Part shown: piece after piece, positions 16,001 through 62,795 of the stretch
Layout of the letters: every line of letters begins with the position of its first letter
Numbering within the stretch: position 1 is the first letter of the stretch
Source: Podarcis erhardii
Taxonomy: Eukaryota
Reading direction: 5' to 3' (one strand)
NCBI GenBank assembly: GCA_964252035.1
Contig: OZ176208.1
DNA length: 64,000 bases
Notes under the pieces: generated by a model
Databases searched by the model: none
Seen by the model: the letters and a program-made list of their open reading frames with translations, nothing else
Told to the model about the DNA's origin: nothing
Made by a program: the position numbers and the translations under genes

Positions 16001-16293
16001 TATAAACAAACACATAAAACATACATAACTCATAGCCTTATTAAAAGGCTTATTAAATTACACTTTTTAACTTTGTTAATTGACTTCCTCCCTTCCCCTT
16101 GGTTGAATTTCATTGCATTTTAACGGTTTTCCAAATCACAGTCCTTATAAAATTTAACTTAAACATGAGCATCCTTAGTATTATTATTATTATTAAAAAG
16201 AAAACCCAACCCTCCGCTTAAGCACAAGGGAAATAAGGAAGAGCGAGTCTCCTGAAGAAGCAAGAAATAGGCGGGAAGCTGAGGGAGACCCAC

Positions 16294-17088
16294 CTGGAAG
16301 CGCACGCGGGCCTTGCTTTCCTCTCGAGGCCCCTCCGAGGGCTTCTCCGCGGCCTCGTCTCCCCGCTTCTCCTCTGGCTGGGGCGGCGCCCCCTCGCCGT
16401 CCTCCCGAGGCTTCTCCGGCTGTTCCAGGCCGCCCTCGGGGGCTGGGCCCGAGCCCTCCTTCCTCTCGGCCTTGGGGCGCGGCGGCGGCGGCCGCTGCTC
16501 CTCCTGCAGGGCGGCGGGGCCCTCAGCCTTCTCCCCGCCCGCGCGCGCCTCGTCGGCTTTCTGCGGCGGCGGCGGCGGCGGCGTCGAGGCGGCGGCGGCG
16601 GGGCCGTCGGGCGGCTCGGCTTCCTCCAGGAAAGTGGTGAGGCGCCGCGGAGCCACGGGCGAGTAGACGGCGATGGTCCTGGGGAAGCGCACGGAGCGGC
16701 AGGCGCCGCTGACGGAGCTGCCTTGCTCCTGCTCGACGGCGCGGCGGCGCAAGAAGAGGGGCCGCGGCCCGAGCGAGCACTGCACCGAGGCGTCCTGGCG
16801 CGGGTTGACTTGCACGCCCACCTCCTTGGTGTTGGCCTTGCGCAGGCGGGGAGTCAGGTTGGGGTTCACCTGGGACAGGATGGCTTTCAGCTGCGCCCGC
16901 TGGTAGTTGTCGAAGTACTCGGCCGCCGCGGCCGCCACCGCCGCCGTCTCGCCATAACCGGAGAAGTAGCCGCCCCGCTGCCTCCACGGACCCTGCCCGC
17001 CTTTGCCTCTCGGGTAGCGGTAGGAGTAAGGGTTGTAGGAAGGGTACGACGAGTAGCTCTCCATGGCGTCGTCCACCAAAGCGGCCAT
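16294..17088 (-). CDS. ZAR1: ZAR1 (zygote arrest 1) exon 1, MAALVDD...KARVRFQ (265 codons)
   Basis: ATG at 17088; conserved AEYFDNYQRAQLKAILSQVNPNLTPRLRKANTKEVGVQVNPRQDASVQCSLG motif; donor CAG|gtgggt. Four exons total 368 aa. Confidence 0.96.
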
Positions 17089-19006: not shown

Positions 19007-19528
19007 CTAGAGGGCAGTCTGCATCGGTTCCATGAGCACTGAGGCATGGCCCTCGGCAGTCACAGTGCCATAGGAAGTATCTGGCATTTCCTCTTCCTTC
19101 AGTTTTTTGTAGGAAATGTTTGTATCTTCTTCTTCTTCCCCTACTAGAGGCTCTTGTTTGTAGGAATCCTTGCCGTACACCTTATAGACCAATACAAACA
19201 GACCAGCTTCTGCAGCCTGGAAGAGAGCGTAGAGCAAGGGGAACATGTACATGCTCCCAATAAGTTCTGGAGGGAAGGTCAGTTTGAGTATAGCGGTGCA
19301 GAGCTGTACGTTTTGGCAGCCGGTCTCCAGTGACACTGTCCTCTTGCAGTGAGGTGGCAAGTGAAATAAGGTTGCTATGCCATAACCACAGCCATAGCCA
19401 GCCAAGGGCATCAGCACAGCTACTACGTAGACAGTAGCAGGGATAGTAGCCAGCAGATCAGGTCCCAACATGGTACCGGTTAGGATGAAAAGGATCACCA
19501 GGGATACCAGGAGGGACCACAATGAAAC
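19007..19528 (-). CDS. SLC10A4: SLC10A4 exon 3, VSLWSLLVSLVILFILTG...EPMQTAL-stop
   Basis: ctttgctag|GTT; contains the SBF-family motif VSLETGCQNVQLCTAILKL; stop at 19007. Confidence 0.96.
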   Translation of the reverse strand, partial: VSLWSLLVSLVILFILTGTMLGPDLLATIPATVYVVAVLMPLAGYGCGYGIATLFHLPPHCKRTVSLETGCQNVQLCTAILKLTFPPELIGSMYMFPLLYALFQAAEAGLFVLVYKVYGKDSYKQEPLVGEEEEDTNISYKKLKEEEMPDTSYGTVTAEGHASVLMEPMQTAL

Positions 19529-20699
19529 CTAGCAAAGAAAGCATTGGATTAGATAGAGTAGGATTTTGGAGGACCGCTGCTCTTAATTACATATTACTAT
19601 ATCAGTAAGCATACAGGTTATTTAAAATATATTTCAAGCATCAAGACACATAAGACTGCTTCATTTGCCAAAGCATATGAATGTGTATTGGTGCTGTTAT
19701 ATAAATAGAAGGTGTATATTTGGTGATCACAGACAGAACTAGCAGGATTAACAGTAGAACTGCTTGTTCTGTTTCAATTTCTTATTATTTATTCCAGTTT
19801 ATTTATATACTGGTTTTTGTTTTTTTTTGGCCCAAGGCCCCCCGAAGCAATGAATGATATACTAAAATAAAATATACAGTAGAGTTCAGTGAAATGCCAT
19901 AACAATATAAGACAGCAAGATTGCAACATAGGTGGGCCAAATGAAAGCCTTCTGTAGCTAGAAATTAATGGGCACTCTTAACAACCTCATATACCACATG
20001 CTTTGGGGCTAGAAAACTGAACAATGAGAAATACCAAAAAAAACTACCCCAGTATAGAAGAATTAAGGGTGCTCTCACTACCTCCCCATTCTAATTATGC
20101 AGAGGTGCACAAGCAATCTATGTAATTAACGCAAAAGCATTTTTAAAACAAAAATGGATGGTCATGGTGGATCAGTTGCAGGAATTGCTGGAGAAAACTG
20201 ATCATCTGAGCACATCTCAGTCTTGGTTCAGGCCTGGCAGCTTTCTGACAGTATATAACACCCGTGCTGCAGGAACTGCACTCCCTGCCTAAATGCTACC
20301 AGGCCATGTTCAAGGTTTTGTTACTAGTGTACAAAGGCCTAAACAACTTGGGATCAGAGTGCTTCACTCTCAGTTGGCCAACTAGATCACTGATATCATA
20401 AGGAGCTGAGCTTTCAGAAGTACCTTGTGCCTCAGAAATCAAATATATTTGTACCCAGCTCAGTAACCCCTGCAATATGGGAACATTCAGTGAAGGCGAG
20501 GCAGATGATGGCATTGTGTGACTCCTATGTGCCATAAGAACATTTTTATTTAAGCAAACATTTCTAGAATGCCAATTTTATCTAGTCATGTTTAATACTC
20601 TACTGTTTTTATGATGTATGTTATTCTATATTTTAATCTGTTGCTAAATCGTCTAGAGAGCAATGGTTGTATATGATTCTTAAATAATTAAAAATAAAT

Positions 20700-21375
20700 A
20701 AAATAAAAAAATTCCTTCCAGTAGCACCTTAAAGACCAACTGAGTTAGTTCTAGGTATGAGCTTTCGTGTGCATGCACACTTCTTCAGATACACTGAAAC
20801 AGAAGTCACCGGACCTTTCTATATAGTGAGAAGGTGGGGAGGGGTATTACTCAGAAGGGTGGTGGGAATGGGTGATTGGCAGATAGCTGCGATGAGCCTG
20901 TTGACGACTCTTAACGACTGCAATAGGTCTAACAGGAAAAAGCAAGGGGTGAGAAGGTGAAAAATGGCTTTGTCATGTATAATGAGATAAGAATCCAATG
21001 TCTTTGTTCAAACCAGGTCTCTCCATAGTTTTAAGTTTGGTGATAAGTTGCAATTCAGCAGCTTCTCTTTCCAGTCTATTTCTGAAATTCCTTTGTAATA
21101 GAACAGCTACTTTGAGATCTTGTATAGAATGTCCTGGGAGATTGAAGTGTTCTCCTACTGGTTTTTCTGTCTTGTGGTTCCTGATGTCGGATTTATGTCC
21201 GTTTATTCTTTGGCGTAAGGTCTGGCCTGTTTGTCCAATATAGAGAGCTGAAGGACACTGTTGGCATTTTATGGCATACACAATGTTAGACGATGAGCAA
21301 TTAAATGGTCCCGAGATGGTATGTGTGATGTTGTTGGGGCCAGTAATGGTGTTGTCCGGGTGTATGTGGCAGCAA
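20700..21375 (-). mobile_element. Penelope-like retroelement 3' fragment, left arm of palindrome (GIY-YIG endonuclease C-terminus plus 3' pLTR region)
   Basis: Open frame CCHIHPDNTITG...VYAIKCQQCPSALYIGQTGQTLRQRINGH...GLN...HYT-stop; carries a hammerhead motif; TSD TAAAAATAAAT at 20689-20699. Confidence 0.92.
20755..20792 (-). ncRNA. Minimal type I hammerhead ribozyme motif, sense to the SLC10A4 pre-mRNA
   Basis: Exact mirror image of 21947-21984. Confidence 0.85.
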
Positions 21376-22080
21376 ACACCCGGACAACACCATTACTGGC
21401 CCCAACAACATCACACATACCATCTCGGGACCATTTAATTGCTCATCGTCTAACATTGTGTATGCCATAAAATGCCAACAGTGTCCTTCAGCTCTCTATA
21501 TTGGACAAACAGGCCAGACCTTACGCCAAAGAATAAACGGACATAAATCCGACATCAGGAACCACAAGACAGAAAAACCAGTAGGAGAACACTTCAATCT
21601 CCCAGGACATTCTATACAAGATCTCAAAGTAGCTGTTCTATTACAAAGGAATTTCAGAAATAGACTGGAAAGAGAAGCTGCTGAATTGCAACTTATCACC
21701 AAACTTAAAACTATGGAGAGACCTGGTTTGAACAAAGACATTGGATTCTTATCTCATTATACATGACAAAGCCATTTTTCACCTTCTCACCCCTTGCTTT
21801 TTCCTGTTAGACCTATTGCAGTCGTTAAGAGTCGTCAACAGGCTCATCGCAGCTATCTGCCAATCACCCATTCCCACCACCCTTCTGAGTAATACCCCTC
21901 CCCACCTTCTCACTATATAGAAAGGTCCGGTGACTTCTGTTTCAGTGTATCTGAAGAAGTGTGCATGCACACGAAAGCTCATACCTAGAACTAACTCAGT
22001 TGGTCTTTAAGGTGCTACTGGAAGGAATTTTTTTATTTTGTTTTGACCATAGCAGACCAACACGGCTACCTATCTGTAAC
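21376..22080 (+). mobile_element. Penelope-like retroelement 3' fragment, right arm of palindrome, with 41-nt extra 3' tail
   Basis: Reverse complement of 20700-21363. Frame open 21377-21766 (129 aa, GIY-YIG); TSD copy at 22081-22091. Confidence 0.92.
21947..21984 (+). ncRNA. Minimal type I hammerhead ribozyme motif (PLE-associated)
   Basis: GUAU-CUGAAGA-A-GUGUGC[AU]GCACAC-GAAA-GCUC^AUAC. Stem I GUAU/AUAC, 6-bp stem II, palindromic AGCU stem III; predicted cleavage after C21980. Confidence 0.85.
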
Positions 22081-22777
22081 TAAAAATAAATAAATATTCA
22101 GGATAAATTGCAAATTACTAGTGTGGCCCTCATCTGCTACCAATTTATTTATTTATTACTGAAGCGGTACCTTTTGCTACTCCAAATCAAATTCCAGTGT
22201 ATCTTGGGGTGGTAAAATGCCCCCTGAGAAAACCATGTGTGTTGTTGGAAAATCCTATGGGGCATTTATTTTACCCCACCCTTTTTATACTGGGGGGGGG
22301 GGGAGCACCACAATGGCAAAACAACAACAACACACATTTTGTGTCACAAGCCACTTTTCCGCCCCCAGAAATAAAACTGCAAGCGGCTGAAATTTAGAAA
22401 TATTGTTTACTACTATGCATATGGCAATGTCGTAGGAGGACAACTGTGTGTGAATTCCTTCTGTGTAAATTCTGTAACAAAACAAAACAAAAAATTGCTC
22501 TCAAGGCAGGATTTCATCTCGCAATACTGGACGGAGGATCATTGGTTGCAGTTTACACTGTTGGTCCCTCTAGCTTAGCGTTGCCTTCTTTGGTGATTCT
22601 GCAAGACTTCAGATACCAGCAGCCCTGCTAGAGCAGTTCTTCACTTGGAAAGCAAACATGGCACTCGGCAAATAATGCAAAGGGATCCTGTGCCTTCAGG
22701 ACATATATGCTCTCCCACTGTCTCACTGGAGTAACACTTTAATTTCTTTGTTAAAATTTCATTCTTACATTCATATA

Positions 22778-22990
22778 CAGTGGTACCCCGGGTTACAGAC
22801 TCTGCTAACCCAGAAATAGTACCTCAGGTTAAGAACTTTGCTTCAGGATGAGAACAGAAATCATGTTCTGGTGGTGCAGCGGCAGCAGCAGGAGGCCCCA
22901 CTAGCTAAAGTGGTGTCTCAGGTTAAGAACAGTTTCAGGTTAAGAACGGACCTCCGGAATGAATTAAGTTCTTAACCCGAGATACCACTG
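22778..22990. mobile_element. MITE family B copy in SLC10A4 intron 2
   Basis: TA|CAGTGGTACC...GATACCACTG|TA. Confidence 0.9.
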
Positions 22991-23257
22991 TATACCACTT
23001 TAGCTCCAAGGAGCTGAAAGTGGTATATTCCTCCTAATTTTTTTTTATCACAACATCCTTGTGAGAAAGAGTAGGCTGAGAGGCAGTCACCCAGTGAGCT
23101 TTGTGGCTAATTGGGGATTTGAACCCAGGTCTCCATGACCCTATAGTTTGACACTAATTACACCACTGCTCTTGGTTCTAGCTAGATGTAGTCCTTGCCT
23201 GCATTAGGGCTCCTCCCTGTATCCCCTGTAAAGGTGGGCATCTGGGGCCTGGCTTAC

Positions 23258-23468
23258 CTTCAGCAGGATGTCTGCCACCCTGGTGAATCTGTATCGGATG
23301 AAGACCCCAATGCCGATGGGGAGCAGAGTGCTGCATAAGGTCATGGTGACGGCGCCCAGGGGCAACAGGCGCACTAACGGGGTGTTGATCCAGGCTCGGC
23401 TGTAGACCCACAGGCAAAGAGGCATCAAGACCAGAGCAAGCAACGTAGACGACGTGGTCATGATTATA
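23258..23468 (-). CDS. SLC10A4: SLC10A4 exon 2, (S)IIMTTSSTLLALVLMPLCLWVYS...VADILLK
   Basis: ctggcag|TATA...AAG|gtaagc, 211 nt, phase 2/0. Confidence 0.96.
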
Positions 23469-24804
23469 CTGCCAGAGACGAGAGAAAACAGAGTTCCCAG
23501 AGGGAAAAATACGTGATGTACTGAAGTTCCTTCCACCGCCCCATTCACTTTCCACGGGCTGCTCAGACGGCACATTTTATTGCAGAAGCCTCTTCCCTTT
23601 AGTCTTTCCAACCTCACACTGCCAGTGGGAACCTCCTGCTTGGCTGCTAATTTTATACGGGTGATTTCTGCCTTTTACACTCTGTGTGTATGTTGTAGAA
23701 GCAGAAGCCGGTAGTTTTGAAAGAGAAAGGCACCCTTCCCAATTCGTTACAATGCACTGTTCTCGCCATGGCATGATGTGCTGCTGTCTCTCATCTGTCC
23801 AGTGCAGGCTTTACTTAAACACATTATCTCTCTTCCCCACAGTCCACACTTTTTCTCCCCTCCCTCCCCATCGTTAAAAACTTCCTCCCCACGCACACCA
23901 CATATGCTGTTTTCCAGCACTGCTGCCTGCAGGGCGTGTCTGGCTATCAAGGTTCACAGCGCACACTGGCAGCACAGCTCTCTCTCCTCTTTGTGCTAGC
24001 TTGCAAGTGAAACTAGAGGGTCTCGGAAAGCAGGGAGAGAAGCAAGAGCTTAGCGGCTTACAAAAAGATGTACTGTGCAAAAGGAAAAGGCTGCCCACAT
24101 TGTCTGGCTGTGCCCCATACCCTGTCTTGCCTCCCCCCCCCAATTAATTCTTAAATCATAGAAACAGCTGGTGGGGATTGAAACCTGCAGGGAAAGTTGT
24201 TCCCCAAGCCCAAATGCACAGGTCTGTGGGTGATTCCTGGCAGACAGGCAGACATTCAACAGGTGCATCTTTTCTCAGGCTGGAGATGCAGCGATGGGTG
24301 AAACTTCCATTAGGAAAGGCAGATAACTCCAGTGCAGGCGCTCTGCACTTGCTCAGTGGCACTTGCCTCTTTGCCCCACCCTCTGGGAACAGGGCATACA
24401 TAACAACTCATCTGACGTTTGCTCGGGAGTTTTACATTTCATCTCTCCGTTCCTTTTCCTCGCAGGACCTCCGTGCCTTGAGCAGGTGCTGTGACGGATA
24501 AGATATTCTACGGGTGGATTTGGCTTCCATCGTGGGGGGGGGGGGGGAGAGAGATAGGAGGGCGCTACACCTGTTGAATGTCTGCTCGCTGTCCCAATGT
24601 GAATGGAGTTGGAGCTCTGCCGGGAAACAATGCAACTTTAGACAGTGTGCTAAAGCGAAAATAACCGATTTCAGACAGAAGCACCCACAATCTCGCTCCT
24701 CCCCGCTTCCTCCTGCAGGAGAAATGCCCTCAGTCTCGCTGCCAGTGCCACCCTTTCCCCTGGTTCGCTGCCCCAGAGATGGGTGGGGTATAAATAATAA
24801 GATT

Positions 24805-24999: not shown

Positions 25000-25850
25000 T
25001 GTTACTAGCCCGTTTGGCTCTTCTTGCCCAGCGGACCCCCCACCCGGCCTCCAGCTTGGCCCTCCCTTCCCTTCCCCTTCGGGTACCTGAGGTTCATGTC
25101 CCCGTTGACCAGGAGCGACATGATGTTGGAGAGGTTCCCCCCGGGGCAGCACCCGCACAGCAGGACGGTGACGGCTGCCACCTCGTCGAGGGCGAAGACG
25201 AGCGCCATCAGGAAAGCCACGAAGGGCATGAGCCCGAACTGGCACAGCAGCGCCAGCAGCAAGCCCAGGGGCCGCCTCAGCTGCGCGCCCAGCTGGCTCA
25301 GCTCCACCGTGCAGCCCAAGCCCAGCATGGCCACGAAGAGAGCCAGCGCCACGAAGACGCTCAGAGCCTGGTTCAAAGGGGTGTTCCAGAAAGACGCAGA
25401 GCCGCTGTCTTCTCCGGGCGCCAAGCCGGCCGTGGGCGCCCACGTCGCAGCCGGGCTGGGGACGGGGCTCTCGCTCCCGCTGCCTGAGGAGACCGTGAGG
25501 TTCCCGCGCTCTTCCCAGGAGCTGTCCATGGCTCCAGGCGTGCGTCTCCCTCGGACGCTGAGCTTCAAGTGAGGCGAGAAGTGGGGCGCGCCTGAGGAGC
25601 CCCCGTCAGTTGGGGACAGACAGACAGACGGGTGGACGAATGAGAGGGGGAAGCAGCTGAGGAGGCTGTCTGTGCGTCTGTCAGTCACTGCAACAGGCGC
25701 CCTCCGCCGCTCCTTCAGGACCTTGCCTCGCCGGCGGCCACATCCTTGGGAAGCTCTCGCGCGCCAAACTCACCGCTTTATTGGCTCTTTCCCGCCGGCG
25801 GCGGCGGATGGATTTCTTGCACCGCATCACGTGTCAGTGAGTACCTTGCG
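25000..25850. promoter_or_regulatory. CpG island / promoter of SLC10A4, with CCAAT box (plus-strand attgg 25780-25784) and E-box CACGTG (25828-25833)
   Basis: GC/CpG-dense; motifs read directly; boundaries approximate. Confidence 0.75.
25087..25529 (-). CDS. SLC10A4: SLC10A4 (solute carrier family 10 member 4) exon 1, MDSSWEERGNLT...CCPGGNLSNIMSLLVNGDMNL(S)
   Basis: ATG in good context (gccATGg) at 25529; SBF motif CPGGNLSN; donor CTCAG|gtaccc, 443 nt. Three exons total 391 aa. The track ORF starts at an upstream non-ATG codon. Confidence 0.94.
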
Positions 25851-32652: not shown

Positions 32653-32808
32653 GTCAAAACAAAATAAAAGAAAAAAAAATTCCTTCCAGTAGCACCTTAA
32701 AGACCAACTAAGTTAGTTCTAGGTATGAGCTTTCGTGTGCATGCACACTTCTTCAGATACACGAAATGTCATTTCGTGTATCTGAAGAAGTGTGCATGCA
32801 CACGAAAG
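32653..32808. mobile_element. Miniature Penelope-like insertion: minus-strand hammerhead plus 3' end, followed by an inverted partial hammerhead copy
   Basis: Near-identical to 20700-20794; 39-bp arms 32730-32768 and 32770-32808; flanking direct repeat AAAGGAAATGTCA at 32644-32656 and 32805-32817. Confidence 0.9.
32725..32762 (-). ncRNA. Minimal hammerhead ribozyme motif in the mini-PLE
   Basis: Reverse complement reads GUGUAU CUGAAGA AGUGUGCAUGCACAC GAAA GCUC AUAC. Confidence 0.8.
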
Positions 32809-61468: not shown

Positions 61469-62342
61469 AATGTACTTAAGCACCCTGCTTCTCTCCTATT
61501 CCTGACACTGCAGCGGGAGGGGAGAAAACAAGCCCGGATCTGGATTGTCTTAACGTGAACCTGGGCTTGTGATTTGTTTTGTCCACATAAACCATAAACA
61601 GTAAGCCAAGAACAAACCTTAGCTTCCTTTTGCGGTTTTGTTTACAGAAGAAAAACAACATGAGTCCAGCTTTGCATGTCACAACAAGCCAAAATGTCTT
61701 GTTTCAAGCTCGTTTCCTTCCATGCATGGCACTGTCAAATGCAGGAGAGAAGCAAGTGCTTCTGTGCATTAAACCAAAATTTATTTTTAAAGGGGCTTCA
61801 TGTTGAGTGTGGAGCAGGCTAACGACTGAATGCAAGGGGCAGGTCCTTTTCAGATCTGACATCAATCCTGTAGTATTCGTTCCATAGGTAAGCCCGGCTA
61901 GGTCTCATTCTGTCATCTAGTTTGAAAATAGCATTTTAGGGAAGTATTTATGTGTGTTTTTCTTTGCTAAAGCATTCCAACCCAAACTTTCTATTTATCT
62001 GTCATTCTGTTGCTTGGTTTTGTCTTTTATCACATAAACCATGCTTATTTTGCTGTTTTATGTGTAGTAAATATTTTATATTTGCATTGGTTTTGTGTCA
62101 CTCTTCTTCTAGATATTCTGCCTTTCTGATAAACTGCTCAGCACTAGAGAAATTTGAAAACTAAGCAGCCACAGAATGACAATAATCTATATCTACCCGA
62201 AACTCAATTAGCTCAATTACTTTCTAAGCTTATTGATTTCTAGTCGCCCTAATGAAAAGAATGGTCAAGATGCTTATTCTACATGTTCTTGCATGACTCT
62301 CAGCAGATTCAGCAGAAACGCCACACCATTTAGTTGGTTTTA

Positions 62343-62795
<453 letters not shown>

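What the first reader, a model, noticed from the sequence alone, without database searches (positions are those of the whole stretch)
20689..22091. 1.34-kb apparently perfect palindrome in SLC10A4 intron 2 built from a Penelope-like element
Seen: arms 20700-21363 and 21376-22039 are reverse complements (mirror ORF coordinates all sum to 42739; no mismatch found in the segments compared), separated by 12 nt and flanked by the TSD TAAAAATAAAT. Any transcript through it, including the SLC10A4 pre-mRNA, can fold a ~664-bp dsRNA stem. Inference: a substrate for ADAR hyper-editing, Dicer/endo-siRNA production against the PLE family, altered intron-2 splicing, or a DNA cruciform prone to deletion. 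Inverted pLTR structures are known for Penelope-like elements, but a young near-perfect intronic hairpin of this size in a neuronal transporter gene is notable.
Basis: partly seen in the sequence, partly recalled or inferred. Interest (0 to 1): 0.8.

Follow-up and report, generated by a model that had tools for sequence, protein, structure and literature searches.

The report
Young Penelope-like head-to-head insertion in SLC10A4
The 1.34-kb perfect palindrome is real in the sequence and is the usual head-to-head product of one recent Penelope-like retrotransposon insertion into an intron of a transporter gene; public reads also hold the uninterrupted site, so it is young and probably still segregating, and any effect on the gene is untested.

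Summary
Positions 20700-21363 and 21376-22039 are exact reverse complements (664 nt, 12 nt between). The target duplication TAAAAATAAAT(AAA) lies at 20689-20702 and 22081-22094.

Each arm is the 3' end of a Penelope-like element (PLE): the end of a GIY-YIG endonuclease ORF, then a pseudo-LTR with a minimal hammerhead-like motif. Only the right end carries a 41-nt "tail". The 12-nt spacer is PLE sequence that continues the left arm.

The host gene lies on the - strand. It is an SBF-family gene between SLAIN and a ZAR1-like gene, consistent with SLC10A4. The insertion sits in the middle of intron 2 (19529-23257).

New here: Logan contigs of the best-matching sample (organism A) and of a related species about 1.6% diverged (organism C) both join 20680 to 22077 with 4 letters between. 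That is exactly the empty site with one TSD copy. The insertion is therefore recent and heterozygous or polymorphic. No independent data set confirmed the filled allele.

Inverted 5'-truncated copies and one-sided tails are documented PLE hallmarks, so the structure is typical. Three other first-reader notes describe similar PLE palindromes elsewhere in this genome. The proposed dsRNA, ADAR, siRNA and splicing effects were not tested.

The parts
20689..20702 (.). Left copy of the target-site duplication TAAAAATAAATAAA (unambiguous part 20689-20699; the last 3 nt overlap the start of the left arm)
   Evidence: The empty-site contigs of X1 and X8 carry a single copy (table 8).
20700..21363 (-). 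Left arm: 5'-truncated PLE 3' part, sense on the - strand (antisense on +). Lacks the tail.
   Evidence: Perfect mirror of 21376-22039. ORF 20973-21281(-) is identical to the right-arm ORF.
21364..21375 (-). 12-nt spacer. It is PLE sequence continuing the left arm, so the left arm reaches 12-13 nt further 5' in the element than the right arm.
   Evidence: table 7: three X1 contigs match the + strand up to 21376 and only then diverge. Read on the - strand, the spacer keeps the endonuclease frame open and adds Cys/His residues (inspection).
21376..22039 (+). Right arm: 5'-truncated PLE 3' part, sense on the + strand
21374..21766 (+). C-terminal end of the PLE ORF with the GIY-YIG endonuclease domain (stop codon 21764-21766). 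Mirror copy at 20973-21365 on the - strand.
   Evidence: Translation. Pfam PF01541 E 2.2e-6, 28.3 bits against cut-off 22.6. Nearest Atlas clusters are eukaryotic GIY-YIG clusters.
21947..21984 (+). Minimal hammerhead-like motif. Helix I GUAU/AUAC. Core CUGAAGA. Bulged A plus 6-bp helix II GUGUGC/GCACAC. GAAA. Palindromic AGCU in place of helix III. Predicted cut after C21980. Mirror copy at 20755-20792 on the - strand, i.e. sense to the host pre-mRNA.
   Evidence: Inspection. The MFE fold gives helices I and II. The layout matches the min-HHR described in PMC4209133. No Rfam hammerhead model matched, so this is a motif-level match only.
22040..22080 (+). 41-nt AC-rich 'tail', present only at the right end
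   Evidence: the mirror breaks at 22040. The tail as a PLE hallmark lying between two RT start sites: PMC8557442 and PMC11167929.
22081..22094 (.). Right copy of the target-site duplication
19529..23257 (-). Intron 2 of the SBF-family (SLC10A4-like) gene. GT donor at 23257-23256, AG acceptor at 19530-19529. The insertion lies about 1.16 kb from each splice site.
23258..23468 (-). Exon 2 of the SBF gene
   Evidence: Pfam SBF E 1.3e-9. Splice sites.
19007..19528 (-). Exon 3 coding part (C-terminus and stop) of the SBF gene
25087..25529 (-). Exon 1 coding part of the SBF gene
   Evidence: Pfam SBF E 4.9e-22..

Best explanation
One recent retrotransposition of a 5'-truncated Penelope-like element (PLE) into an AT-rich site in intron 2 of SLC10A4 produced both arms at once.

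Shown:
- The insertion is bounded by an 11-14-bp TSD.
- The precise empty site exists in public reads.
- The two arms are identical copies of one template, sharing many variants that most family copies lack.
- The right arm ends in a 41-nt tail that the left arm lacks.
- The left arm reaches 12-13 nt further into the element.

Inferred mechanism: the bottom-strand nick primed reverse transcription at the distal start site of the PLE RNA, giving the tail-bearing right arm. The A-rich 3' end of the top strand primed on the U-tract 41 nt upstream, with a 3-nt microhomology, giving the tail-less left arm. The top-strand cDNA then either snapped back on itself or jumped onto the other cDNA about 670 nt in, which fixes equal arms around a 12-nt loop.

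This fits the in-vitro finding that an Anolis PLE protein cleaves and extends both target strands and starts reverse transcription at two nearby internal sites that delimit the tail.

The allele is young: zero differences over 664 bp, absent in a relative about 1.6% diverged, and an empty allele in the best-matching sample. It is probably heterozygous or polymorphic. Effects on the host gene are possible but not shown.
For: Palindrome and TSD.

PLE identity: GIY-YIG domain and nearest Atlas clusters. The hammerhead-like core sits directly before an open frame. The tail ends about 120 nt after the start of helix II, paralleling the 111-118 nt reported for PAc.

Empty site: X1 record 1 (4830 nt, flanks with no differences apart from the one junction mismatch explained next) and X8 record 26 (849 nt) each join 20680 to 22077 with 4 letters between, plus one mismatch. 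This equals the predicted pre-insertion sequence with one TSD copy (table 8).

Same template for both arms: at mirrored pairs 20811/21928, 20816/21923, 20890/21849, 21011/21728 and 21165/21574, most family depth carries another letter, while both arms carry the window's letter (table 3).

Spacer is PLE sequence: table 7.

Family-wide head-to-head copies: many joints between mirrored positions 2079x and 2194x in three species (table 5), and a second fold-back copy at 32653-32808.

Literature: inverted 5'-truncated copies and a one-sided 30-40-bp tail are typical of PLEs (PMC8557442). Both strands are cleaved and extended, and two RT start sites define the tail (PMC11167929).
Against: No independent data set was shown to contain the filled allele, meaning either flank-element junction or the centre. 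The only long contigs across the site show the empty allele. The single read-laying run used assembled contigs, which break in repeats.

Nothing here observes the order of events or the dual priming directly. The proximal start site of this family was not established from other copies: the second copy in the window ends 8 nt into the tail. Two independently primed cDNAs stopping within 13 nt of each other needs a coupling step (snap-back or template jump) that is assumed, not shown.

Rfam hammerhead models did not match. No RT domain is present in this truncated copy.
Confidence: 0.8

Rival explanations
1. Retro-copy of a pre-existing palindromic master. A read-through transcript of an older head-to-head PLE copy elsewhere (antisense arm, loop, sense arm, tail) was reverse-transcribed from the tail and inserted here, so the palindrome was not formed at this site.
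For: Head-to-head copies of this family are abundant (table 5). An insertion that starts at the tail end and has a TSD fits ordinary single-strand TPRT. The left end at the U-tract could be a microhomology-mediated 5' join.
Against: Reverse transcription through a 664-bp perfect RNA hairpin is unfavourable. Perfect arm identity would require the master to be equally young. The three X1 contigs reaching the centre diverge at 21376 rather than bridging it (table 7), so no other copy with this centre was seen. Only a fraction of the records is listed, so this last point is weak.
Confidence: 0.08
2. Assembly artefact. The filled allele does not exist in the animal, for example a chimeric or fold-back long read was incorporated into the assembly.
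For: The best-matching short-read sample yields a contig with the empty site and flanks identical to the window over about 2 kb. Perfect palindromes are a known artefact class of long-read libraries (own knowledge). PLE inverted structures are known to trouble assemblies (PMC8557442).
Against: A fold-back chimera inverts the flank as well. It cannot return to the correct opposite flank in the correct orientation, and it cannot create an exact 11-14-bp TSD whose single copy is seen in the empty allele. The asymmetries (tail on the right only, 12 extra PLE nucleotides on the left arm, 3-nt microhomology at the left junction) are those of a retrotransposition product. There are no Ns or gaps nearby. 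A heterozygous insertion explains the empty contig equally well.
Confidence: 0.07
3. DNA-level origin after a simple insertion. Either a single-arm PLE insertion was later duplicated in inverted orientation by replication template switching, or two independent insertions landed head-to-head and were homogenised by gene conversion.
For: Inverted duplications and conversion between palindrome arms are known in many genomes (own knowledge).
Against: The left arm ends exactly at the TSD, with no duplication or loss of flank. One TSD pair flanks the whole unit, and there is none around a single arm. The empty allele in reads lacks both arms, and no single-arm form was seen. Two independent insertions would need the same nucleotide target and nearly the same truncation point.
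Confidence: 0.05

Closest known systems
Canonical EN+ Penelope-like element insertions with an inverted 5'-truncated copy and one-sided tail (Evgen'ev & Arkhipova 2005; Arkhipova 2006; as summarised in Craig et al. 2021, PMC8557442)
   Same: C-terminal GIY-YIG ORF end, pLTR with a hammerhead-type motif, heavy 5' truncation, adjacent inverted truncated copy forming inverted repeats, a tail of about 40 bp at one end only, and an AT-rich target with a TSD.
   Different: No full-length unit lies between or beside the arms. The whole insertion is just two truncated 3' ends meeting at a 12-nt loop. No RT domain is present, so the clade (Penelope/Poseidon, Neptune or other) was not determined.
PAc (Poseidon_Ac of Anolis carolinensis) in-vitro TPRT system (Frangieh et al. 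2024, PMC11167929)
   Same: The layout matches: hammerhead core immediately before the start of an open frame, an AC-rich region about 110-120 nt further on where the insertions end, and a tail bounded by two start sites. The protein cleaves and extends both target strands and prefers AT-rich targets. Together these would yield exactly a tail-bearing arm and a tail-less arm on opposite strands.
   Different: The sequence family is different: the Poseidon_Ac consensus is not alike at the nucleotide level. That paper reports initiation without homology to the cleaved DNA, whereas the left junction here has a 3-nt A/U microhomology. The paper does not discuss inverted copies. The link made here is my inference.
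L1 5' inversion by twin priming (Ostertag & Kazazian 2001; own knowledge)
   Same: The second target strand is used as a second primer on the element RNA. This gives an inverted 5' segment joined to a direct 3' segment within one TSD, with microhomology at the junctions.
   Different: In L1 the inverted and direct segments cover different, adjacent parts of the RNA. Here the two arms cover the same 664 nt. That requires two templates, re-copying, or a snap-back or template jump onto cDNA.
Intronic inverted-repeat dsRNA substrates such as inverted Alu pairs edited by ADAR (own knowledge)
   Same: A long intramolecular duplex in a pre-mRNA intron. The predicted stem of about 670 bp is far above the length ADARs need.
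   Different: This duplex is perfect and much longer. No expression, editing or small-RNA data were available for this allele.

Membership tests
Penelope-like elements (EN+) | GIY-YIG endonuclease domain at the C-terminal end of the single ORF | tested here: met
   PF01541 E 2.2e-6, 28.3 bits against cut-off 22.6, on window:21374-21763:+. The nearest Atlas clusters are eukaryotic GIY-YIG clusters.
Penelope-like elements (EN+) | Telomerase-like reverse transcriptase domain upstream of the endonuclease | not testable with these tools
   Both arms are truncated about 390 nt before the stop codon, so no RT sequence is present in the window. No full-length copy was available.
Penelope-like elements (EN+) | Hammerhead ribozyme motif in the pseudo-LTR | tested here: inconclusive
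   By inspection, 21947-21984 has CUGAAGA, a 6-bp helix II with a 5' bulge, GAAA, a palindromic AGCU and a 4-bp helix I. This matches the min-HHR description in PMC4209133. No Rfam hammerhead family matched even at E<=10, and the fold z-score is -0.46. Cleavage was not tested.
Penelope-like elements (EN+) | [quoted passage not shown] | tested here: met
   22040-22080 (41 nt, 38 nt if the imperfect mirror extension is counted) is present only on the right. Definition in PMC8557442 and PMC11167929.
Penelope-like elements (EN+) | 5' truncation with an adjacent inverted truncated copy | tested here: met
   The second copy at 32653-32808 is also folded back.
Penelope-like elements (EN+) | True insertion: TSD and a matching empty site | tested here: met
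   The TSD is 11-14 bp. Empty-site contigs occur in X1 and X8 (table 8).
SLC10A4 (host gene) | SBF (sodium/bile acid symporter family) domain split over three coding exons | tested here: met
   PF01758 on exon 1 (E 4.9e-22) and exon 2 (E 1.3e-9). Exon 3 resembles SBF clusters. Splice sites and reading phase are consistent.
SLC10A4 (host gene) | Orthology to SLC10A4 rather than another SLC10 member | tested here: inconclusive
   Judged by synteny only. A SLAIN domain gene lies upstream and a ZAR1-like first exon lies downstream (recognised from memory). SLAIN2, ZAR1 and SLC10A4 are listed in the same 1-Mb interval of chicken chromosome 4 (PMC10976558). No orthology tree was made.
L1-type twin priming | Inverted and direct segments derive from different, non-overlapping parts of one RNA | tested here: not met
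   The arms cover the same 664 nt.
ADAR / Dicer dsRNA substrate | Long intramolecular duplex in an expressed transcript, with A-to-G clusters or 21-22-nt RNAs | not tested
   The duplex is predicted. No RNA run holds the locus. Contigs cannot show editing, and transitions seen in all runs reflect variation among family copies.

The most novel reading that the evidence does not exclude
The locus is a clean natural product of dual-strand target-primed reverse transcription by a PLE. One arm starts at the distal RNA start site and carries the tail. The other arm is on the opposite strand, starts 41 nt upstream and lacks the tail. If so, this would be in-vivo support for the both-strands activity seen in vitro for PAc. 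It would also give a single explanation for two unexplained PLE hallmarks, the inverted copies and the one-sided tail. Because an empty allele still exists, the site would also offer a natural pair of alleles to measure what a 664-bp perfect intronic hairpin does to a vertebrate pre-mRNA (editing, small RNAs, splicing, stability of the DNA palindrome).
Probability: 0.35. Interest if true: 0.5.

Novelty: new member of a known kind. Interest (0 to 1): 0.3.

Why it matters
For genome annotation this is an ordinary case: PLE insertions commonly carry inverted truncated copies, and this is one more. Its modest value lies in three points.

1. It is a very young copy caught with its empty allele, which indicates that this PLE family is or was recently active in this lineage.
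2. Its exact anatomy constrains how PLEs make inverted copies: the tail on one arm only, the other arm 12-13 nt longer at the centre, and microhomology at the tail-less junction. It agrees with the recent in-vitro finding that both target strands are primed.
3. It places a long perfect hairpin and a sense-strand hammerhead-like motif in the middle of an intron of a neuronal transporter gene. A 2026 preprint reports PLE-derived retrozymes to be depleted from such genic positions. The allele may therefore be mildly deleterious and could be used to test the effects of intronic dsRNA.

Tried and rejected
- **Rfam scans.** Scans of 20000-22800 at E<=1 and of 21925-22010 at E<=10 gave no hammerhead family. 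The only hits were sub-threshold miRNA-precursor models on the hairpin tip, which any perfect hairpin produces, and one meaningless lncRNA fragment. I reject a miRNA reading.
- **Search for a full-length PLE or other copies in the window**. Only one further fragment was found (32653-32808). The family consensus, the RT domain and the canonical tail-less end could therefore not be established.
- **Comparison with Poseidon_Ac**. The layout is the same but the sequences are not alike, so no alignment-based transfer of RT start sites was possible.
- **RNA evidence.** No holder on record as RNA. The run guessed to be RNA (X16) has only low-depth contigs on intron flanks and family copies, nothing at the junctions.
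- **X4 (organism B).** Its flank coverage is patchy and no piece across the site was listed, so presence or absence there is unknown.
- **Large protein searches.** I did not run them.
Full report
**1. Observation**

- The repeat finder gives arms 20696-21366 and 21373-22043 (671 nt, 6 nt apart).
- A base-by-base mirror test shows a strictly perfect stretch at 20700-21363 / 21376-22039. It is 664 nt long, every mirrored pair sums to 42739, and 12 nt lie between the arms.
- The longer arms include two mismatches, 20699/22040 and 21364/21375 (blastn 99.70%).
- The direct repeat TAAAAATAAAT lies at 20689-20699 and 22081-22091. It extends to 14 nt, its last three A's overlapping the first bases of the left arm.
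- The window has no N.
- No other inverted repeat in the window exceeds 323 nt or 97%.
- As RNA, the gene-sense strand folds into one uninterrupted hairpin of -1329.5 kcal/mol.

**2. What the arms are**

On the + strand the right arm reads, in order:
- The last 130 codons of an ORF ending at 21764-21766. It carries a GIY-YIG domain (PF01541, E 2.2e-6, above the curated cut-off). Its nearest Atlas clusters are eukaryotic GIY-YIG proteins.
- About 180 nt of non-coding sequence.
- At 21947-21984, a minimal hammerhead-like motif: GUAU, CUGAAGA, a bulged A, helix II GUGUGC/GCACAC, GAAA, a palindromic AGCU, C, then AUAC. The MFE fold recovers helices I and II. This is the architecture described for PLE "min-HHRs": a 6-bp helix II with a 5' bulge, a tiny palindromic helix III, and presumed dimeric action (PMC4209133). 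Rfam's hammerhead models do not match it, so I rate it a motif-level match only.
- An open frame that starts at helix II and runs to the end of the element.
- A 41-nt AC-rich segment at 22040-22080, present only on the right.

This layout parallels the Anolis element PAc. In PAc the ORF begins at helix II, and reverse transcription starts in an AC-rich stem-loop 111-118 nt into the ORF. The optional 30-40-bp "tail" is the sequence between the two RT start sites (PMC11167929). Here the tail end lies about 120 nt after the start of helix II. The Poseidon_Ac consensus itself is a different sequence family.

The 12-nt spacer is not foreign. Three contigs of run X1 match the + strand through 21376 before diverging (table 7). 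Read on the - strand, the spacer keeps the endonuclease frame open. The left arm therefore extends 12-13 nt further 5' in the element than the right arm, while the right arm extends 41 nt further 3'.

**3. Host gene**

- SBF domains (PF01758) are found on - strand ORFs at 25005-25688 and 23204-23617.
- Splice-site inspection gives exon 1 CDS 25087-25529, exon 2 23258-23468 and exon 3 CDS 19007-19528, with consistent phases.
- A SLAIN-domain exon lies upstream at 62340-62786(-).
- A ZAR1-like first exon lies downstream at 16159-17088(-) (recognised from memory).
- SLAIN2, ZAR1 and SLC10A4 are listed together in one interval of chicken chromosome 4 (PMC10976558).

The SLC10A4 assignment is thus supported by synteny, not by an orthology tree. 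Intron 2 is 19529-23257. The insertion sits about 1.16 kb from each splice site and makes up 37% of the intron. On the gene-sense strand the left arm is PLE-sense, so one hammerhead-like motif (20755-20792) and an AAUAAA (at 22037) are sense to the pre-mRNA.

**4. Reads**

All runs offered were Logan contigs with coded names. I laid X1 (organism A, share 0.93), X4 (B), X8 (C) and X16 (guessed RNA) on 19600-23150.

The decisive rows are in table 8.
- X1 record 1 is 4830 nt at depth 13.6. It lies on 19600-20680 and on 22077-22302 with only 4 record letters between.
- X8 record 26 (849 nt) does the same.
- This is exactly the predicted pre-insertion sequence. The 8 nt 20681-20688 are followed by a single TSD copy. 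The aligner placed the last four of those 8 nt (TAAT) on TAAC at 22077-22080, which accounts for the one mismatch reported.

The empty site therefore exists in the best-matching sample, whose flanks are otherwise identical to the window over about 2 kb. It also exists in a relative differing by about 1.6% (31 substitutions in about 1.96 kb of X8 pieces). This confirms the boundaries and the TSD, and it shows the insertion is recent.

It does not confirm the filled allele. No listed contig bridges a junction or the centre, as expected for short-read contigs in a high-copy repeat. X4 gave no information at the site.

Table 3 shows that the window copy differs from most family copies at many sites. 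Both arms carry the same minority letters at mirrored positions (20811/21928, 20816/21923, 20890/21849, 21011/21728, 21165/21574). The arms therefore come from one template.

Table 5 shows dozens of contigs in three species that turn from about 20792 to about 21947. These are mirrored positions at the 5' edge of the hammerhead, so they represent many short head-to-head copies. The window's second copy (32653-32808) is of that kind.

**5. Mechanism**

Shown: a single insertion unit within one TSD, identical arms from one template, the tail on the right only, and extra element sequence at the inner end of the left arm.

Inferred: both target strands primed cDNA synthesis.
- The bottom strand started at the distal site, giving the tail-bearing right arm.
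- The A-rich 3' end of the top strand started on the U-tract 41 nt upstream, giving the tail-less left arm with a 3-nt microhomology.
- About 670 nt in, the top-strand cDNA either folded back on itself or jumped onto the other cDNA. Either step gives equal arms and a short loop.

Three simpler routes fail.
- Snap-back on the bottom-strand cDNA alone is excluded by the orientation of the spacer.
- Snap-back on the top-strand cDNA alone cannot supply the tail.
- Classical L1 twin priming is not met, because the arms cover the same RNA segment.

The model agrees with PAc cleaving and extending both strands and using two start sites (PMC11167929). It also agrees with the statement that PLE insertions often have an adjacent inverted 5'-truncated copy and a tail at one end only (PMC8557442).

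**6. Age**

There are zero differences in 664 mirrored sites. At an assumed 1e-9 substitutions per site per year, this gives an upper bound of roughly 2 million years (3/(2 x 664 x 1e-9)), unless the arms are being homogenised by conversion. Absence in organism C and the empty allele in organism A point to something much younger.

**7. Rivals**

- Retro-copy of a palindromic master: 0.08.
- Assembly artefact: 0.07. A fold-back chimera cannot recreate the correct opposite flank, the TSD, or the PLE-specific asymmetries.
- Later DNA-level duplication or two separate insertions: 0.05.

**8. Function**

A 2026 preprint reports that PLE-derived retrozymes are depleted from introns and exons. That would fit a mildly deleterious, still-segregating allele.

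**9. Earlier scan notes**

Notes for this genome list a hammerhead reading of this same stretch, the mini-insertion at 32.6 kb, and three other PLE palindromes elsewhere. I used them as leads only. They fit the picture that such structures are common in this genome.

**10. Verdict**

The structural interpretation is correct, but the structure is typical for PLEs. The new facts are the empty allele and the fine anatomy. Functional claims remain open.

Noticed in passing
window 32653-32808 (- strand is element sense): A second, tiny PLE-derived insertion, also folded back. The sense part starts exactly at the 5' edge of the hammerhead-like motif and ends 8 nt into the tail (…gttttgac). A ~32-nt antisense arm precedes it. 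The 12-nt loop (gaaatgacattt) is a copy of the flank immediately upstream, which is itself palindromic. The TSD is about atttccttt.
   Followed up: partly
window 20786-20795 joined to 21941-21964 (read laying, table 5): Dozens of contigs in three species join mirrored positions at the 5' edge of the hammerhead-like motif, often with 0-8 extra letters. This indicates many short head-to-head 'two-hammerhead' copies of this family genome-wide.
   Followed up: no
window 22694-23050: An extremely abundant short repeat (summed contig depth in the millions in every run, with loose ends typical of a SINE with a GC-rich microsatellite) lies just downstream of exon 2 in intron 2.
   Followed up: no
window 16159-17088 (-): A 309-aa GC-rich ORF resembling the first exon of ZAR1 lies about 2 kb downstream of the SBF gene's stop codon. 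A SLAIN-domain exon lies at 62340-62786 (-). Gene order on the - strand is SLAIN, SLC10A4-like, ZAR1-like.
   Followed up: partly
window 22037, 21439, 21207 (- strand): The insertion brings AAUAAA/AUUAAA hexamers onto the gene-sense strand of intron 2. Whether any is used as a poly(A) signal is unknown.
   Followed up: no
window 21308-21431: Several Rfam miRNA-precursor models score sub-threshold (E down to 2e-6, bits far below gathering) on the tip of the palindrome. This is a generic effect of a perfect hairpin, not evidence for a miRNA gene.
   Followed up: yes
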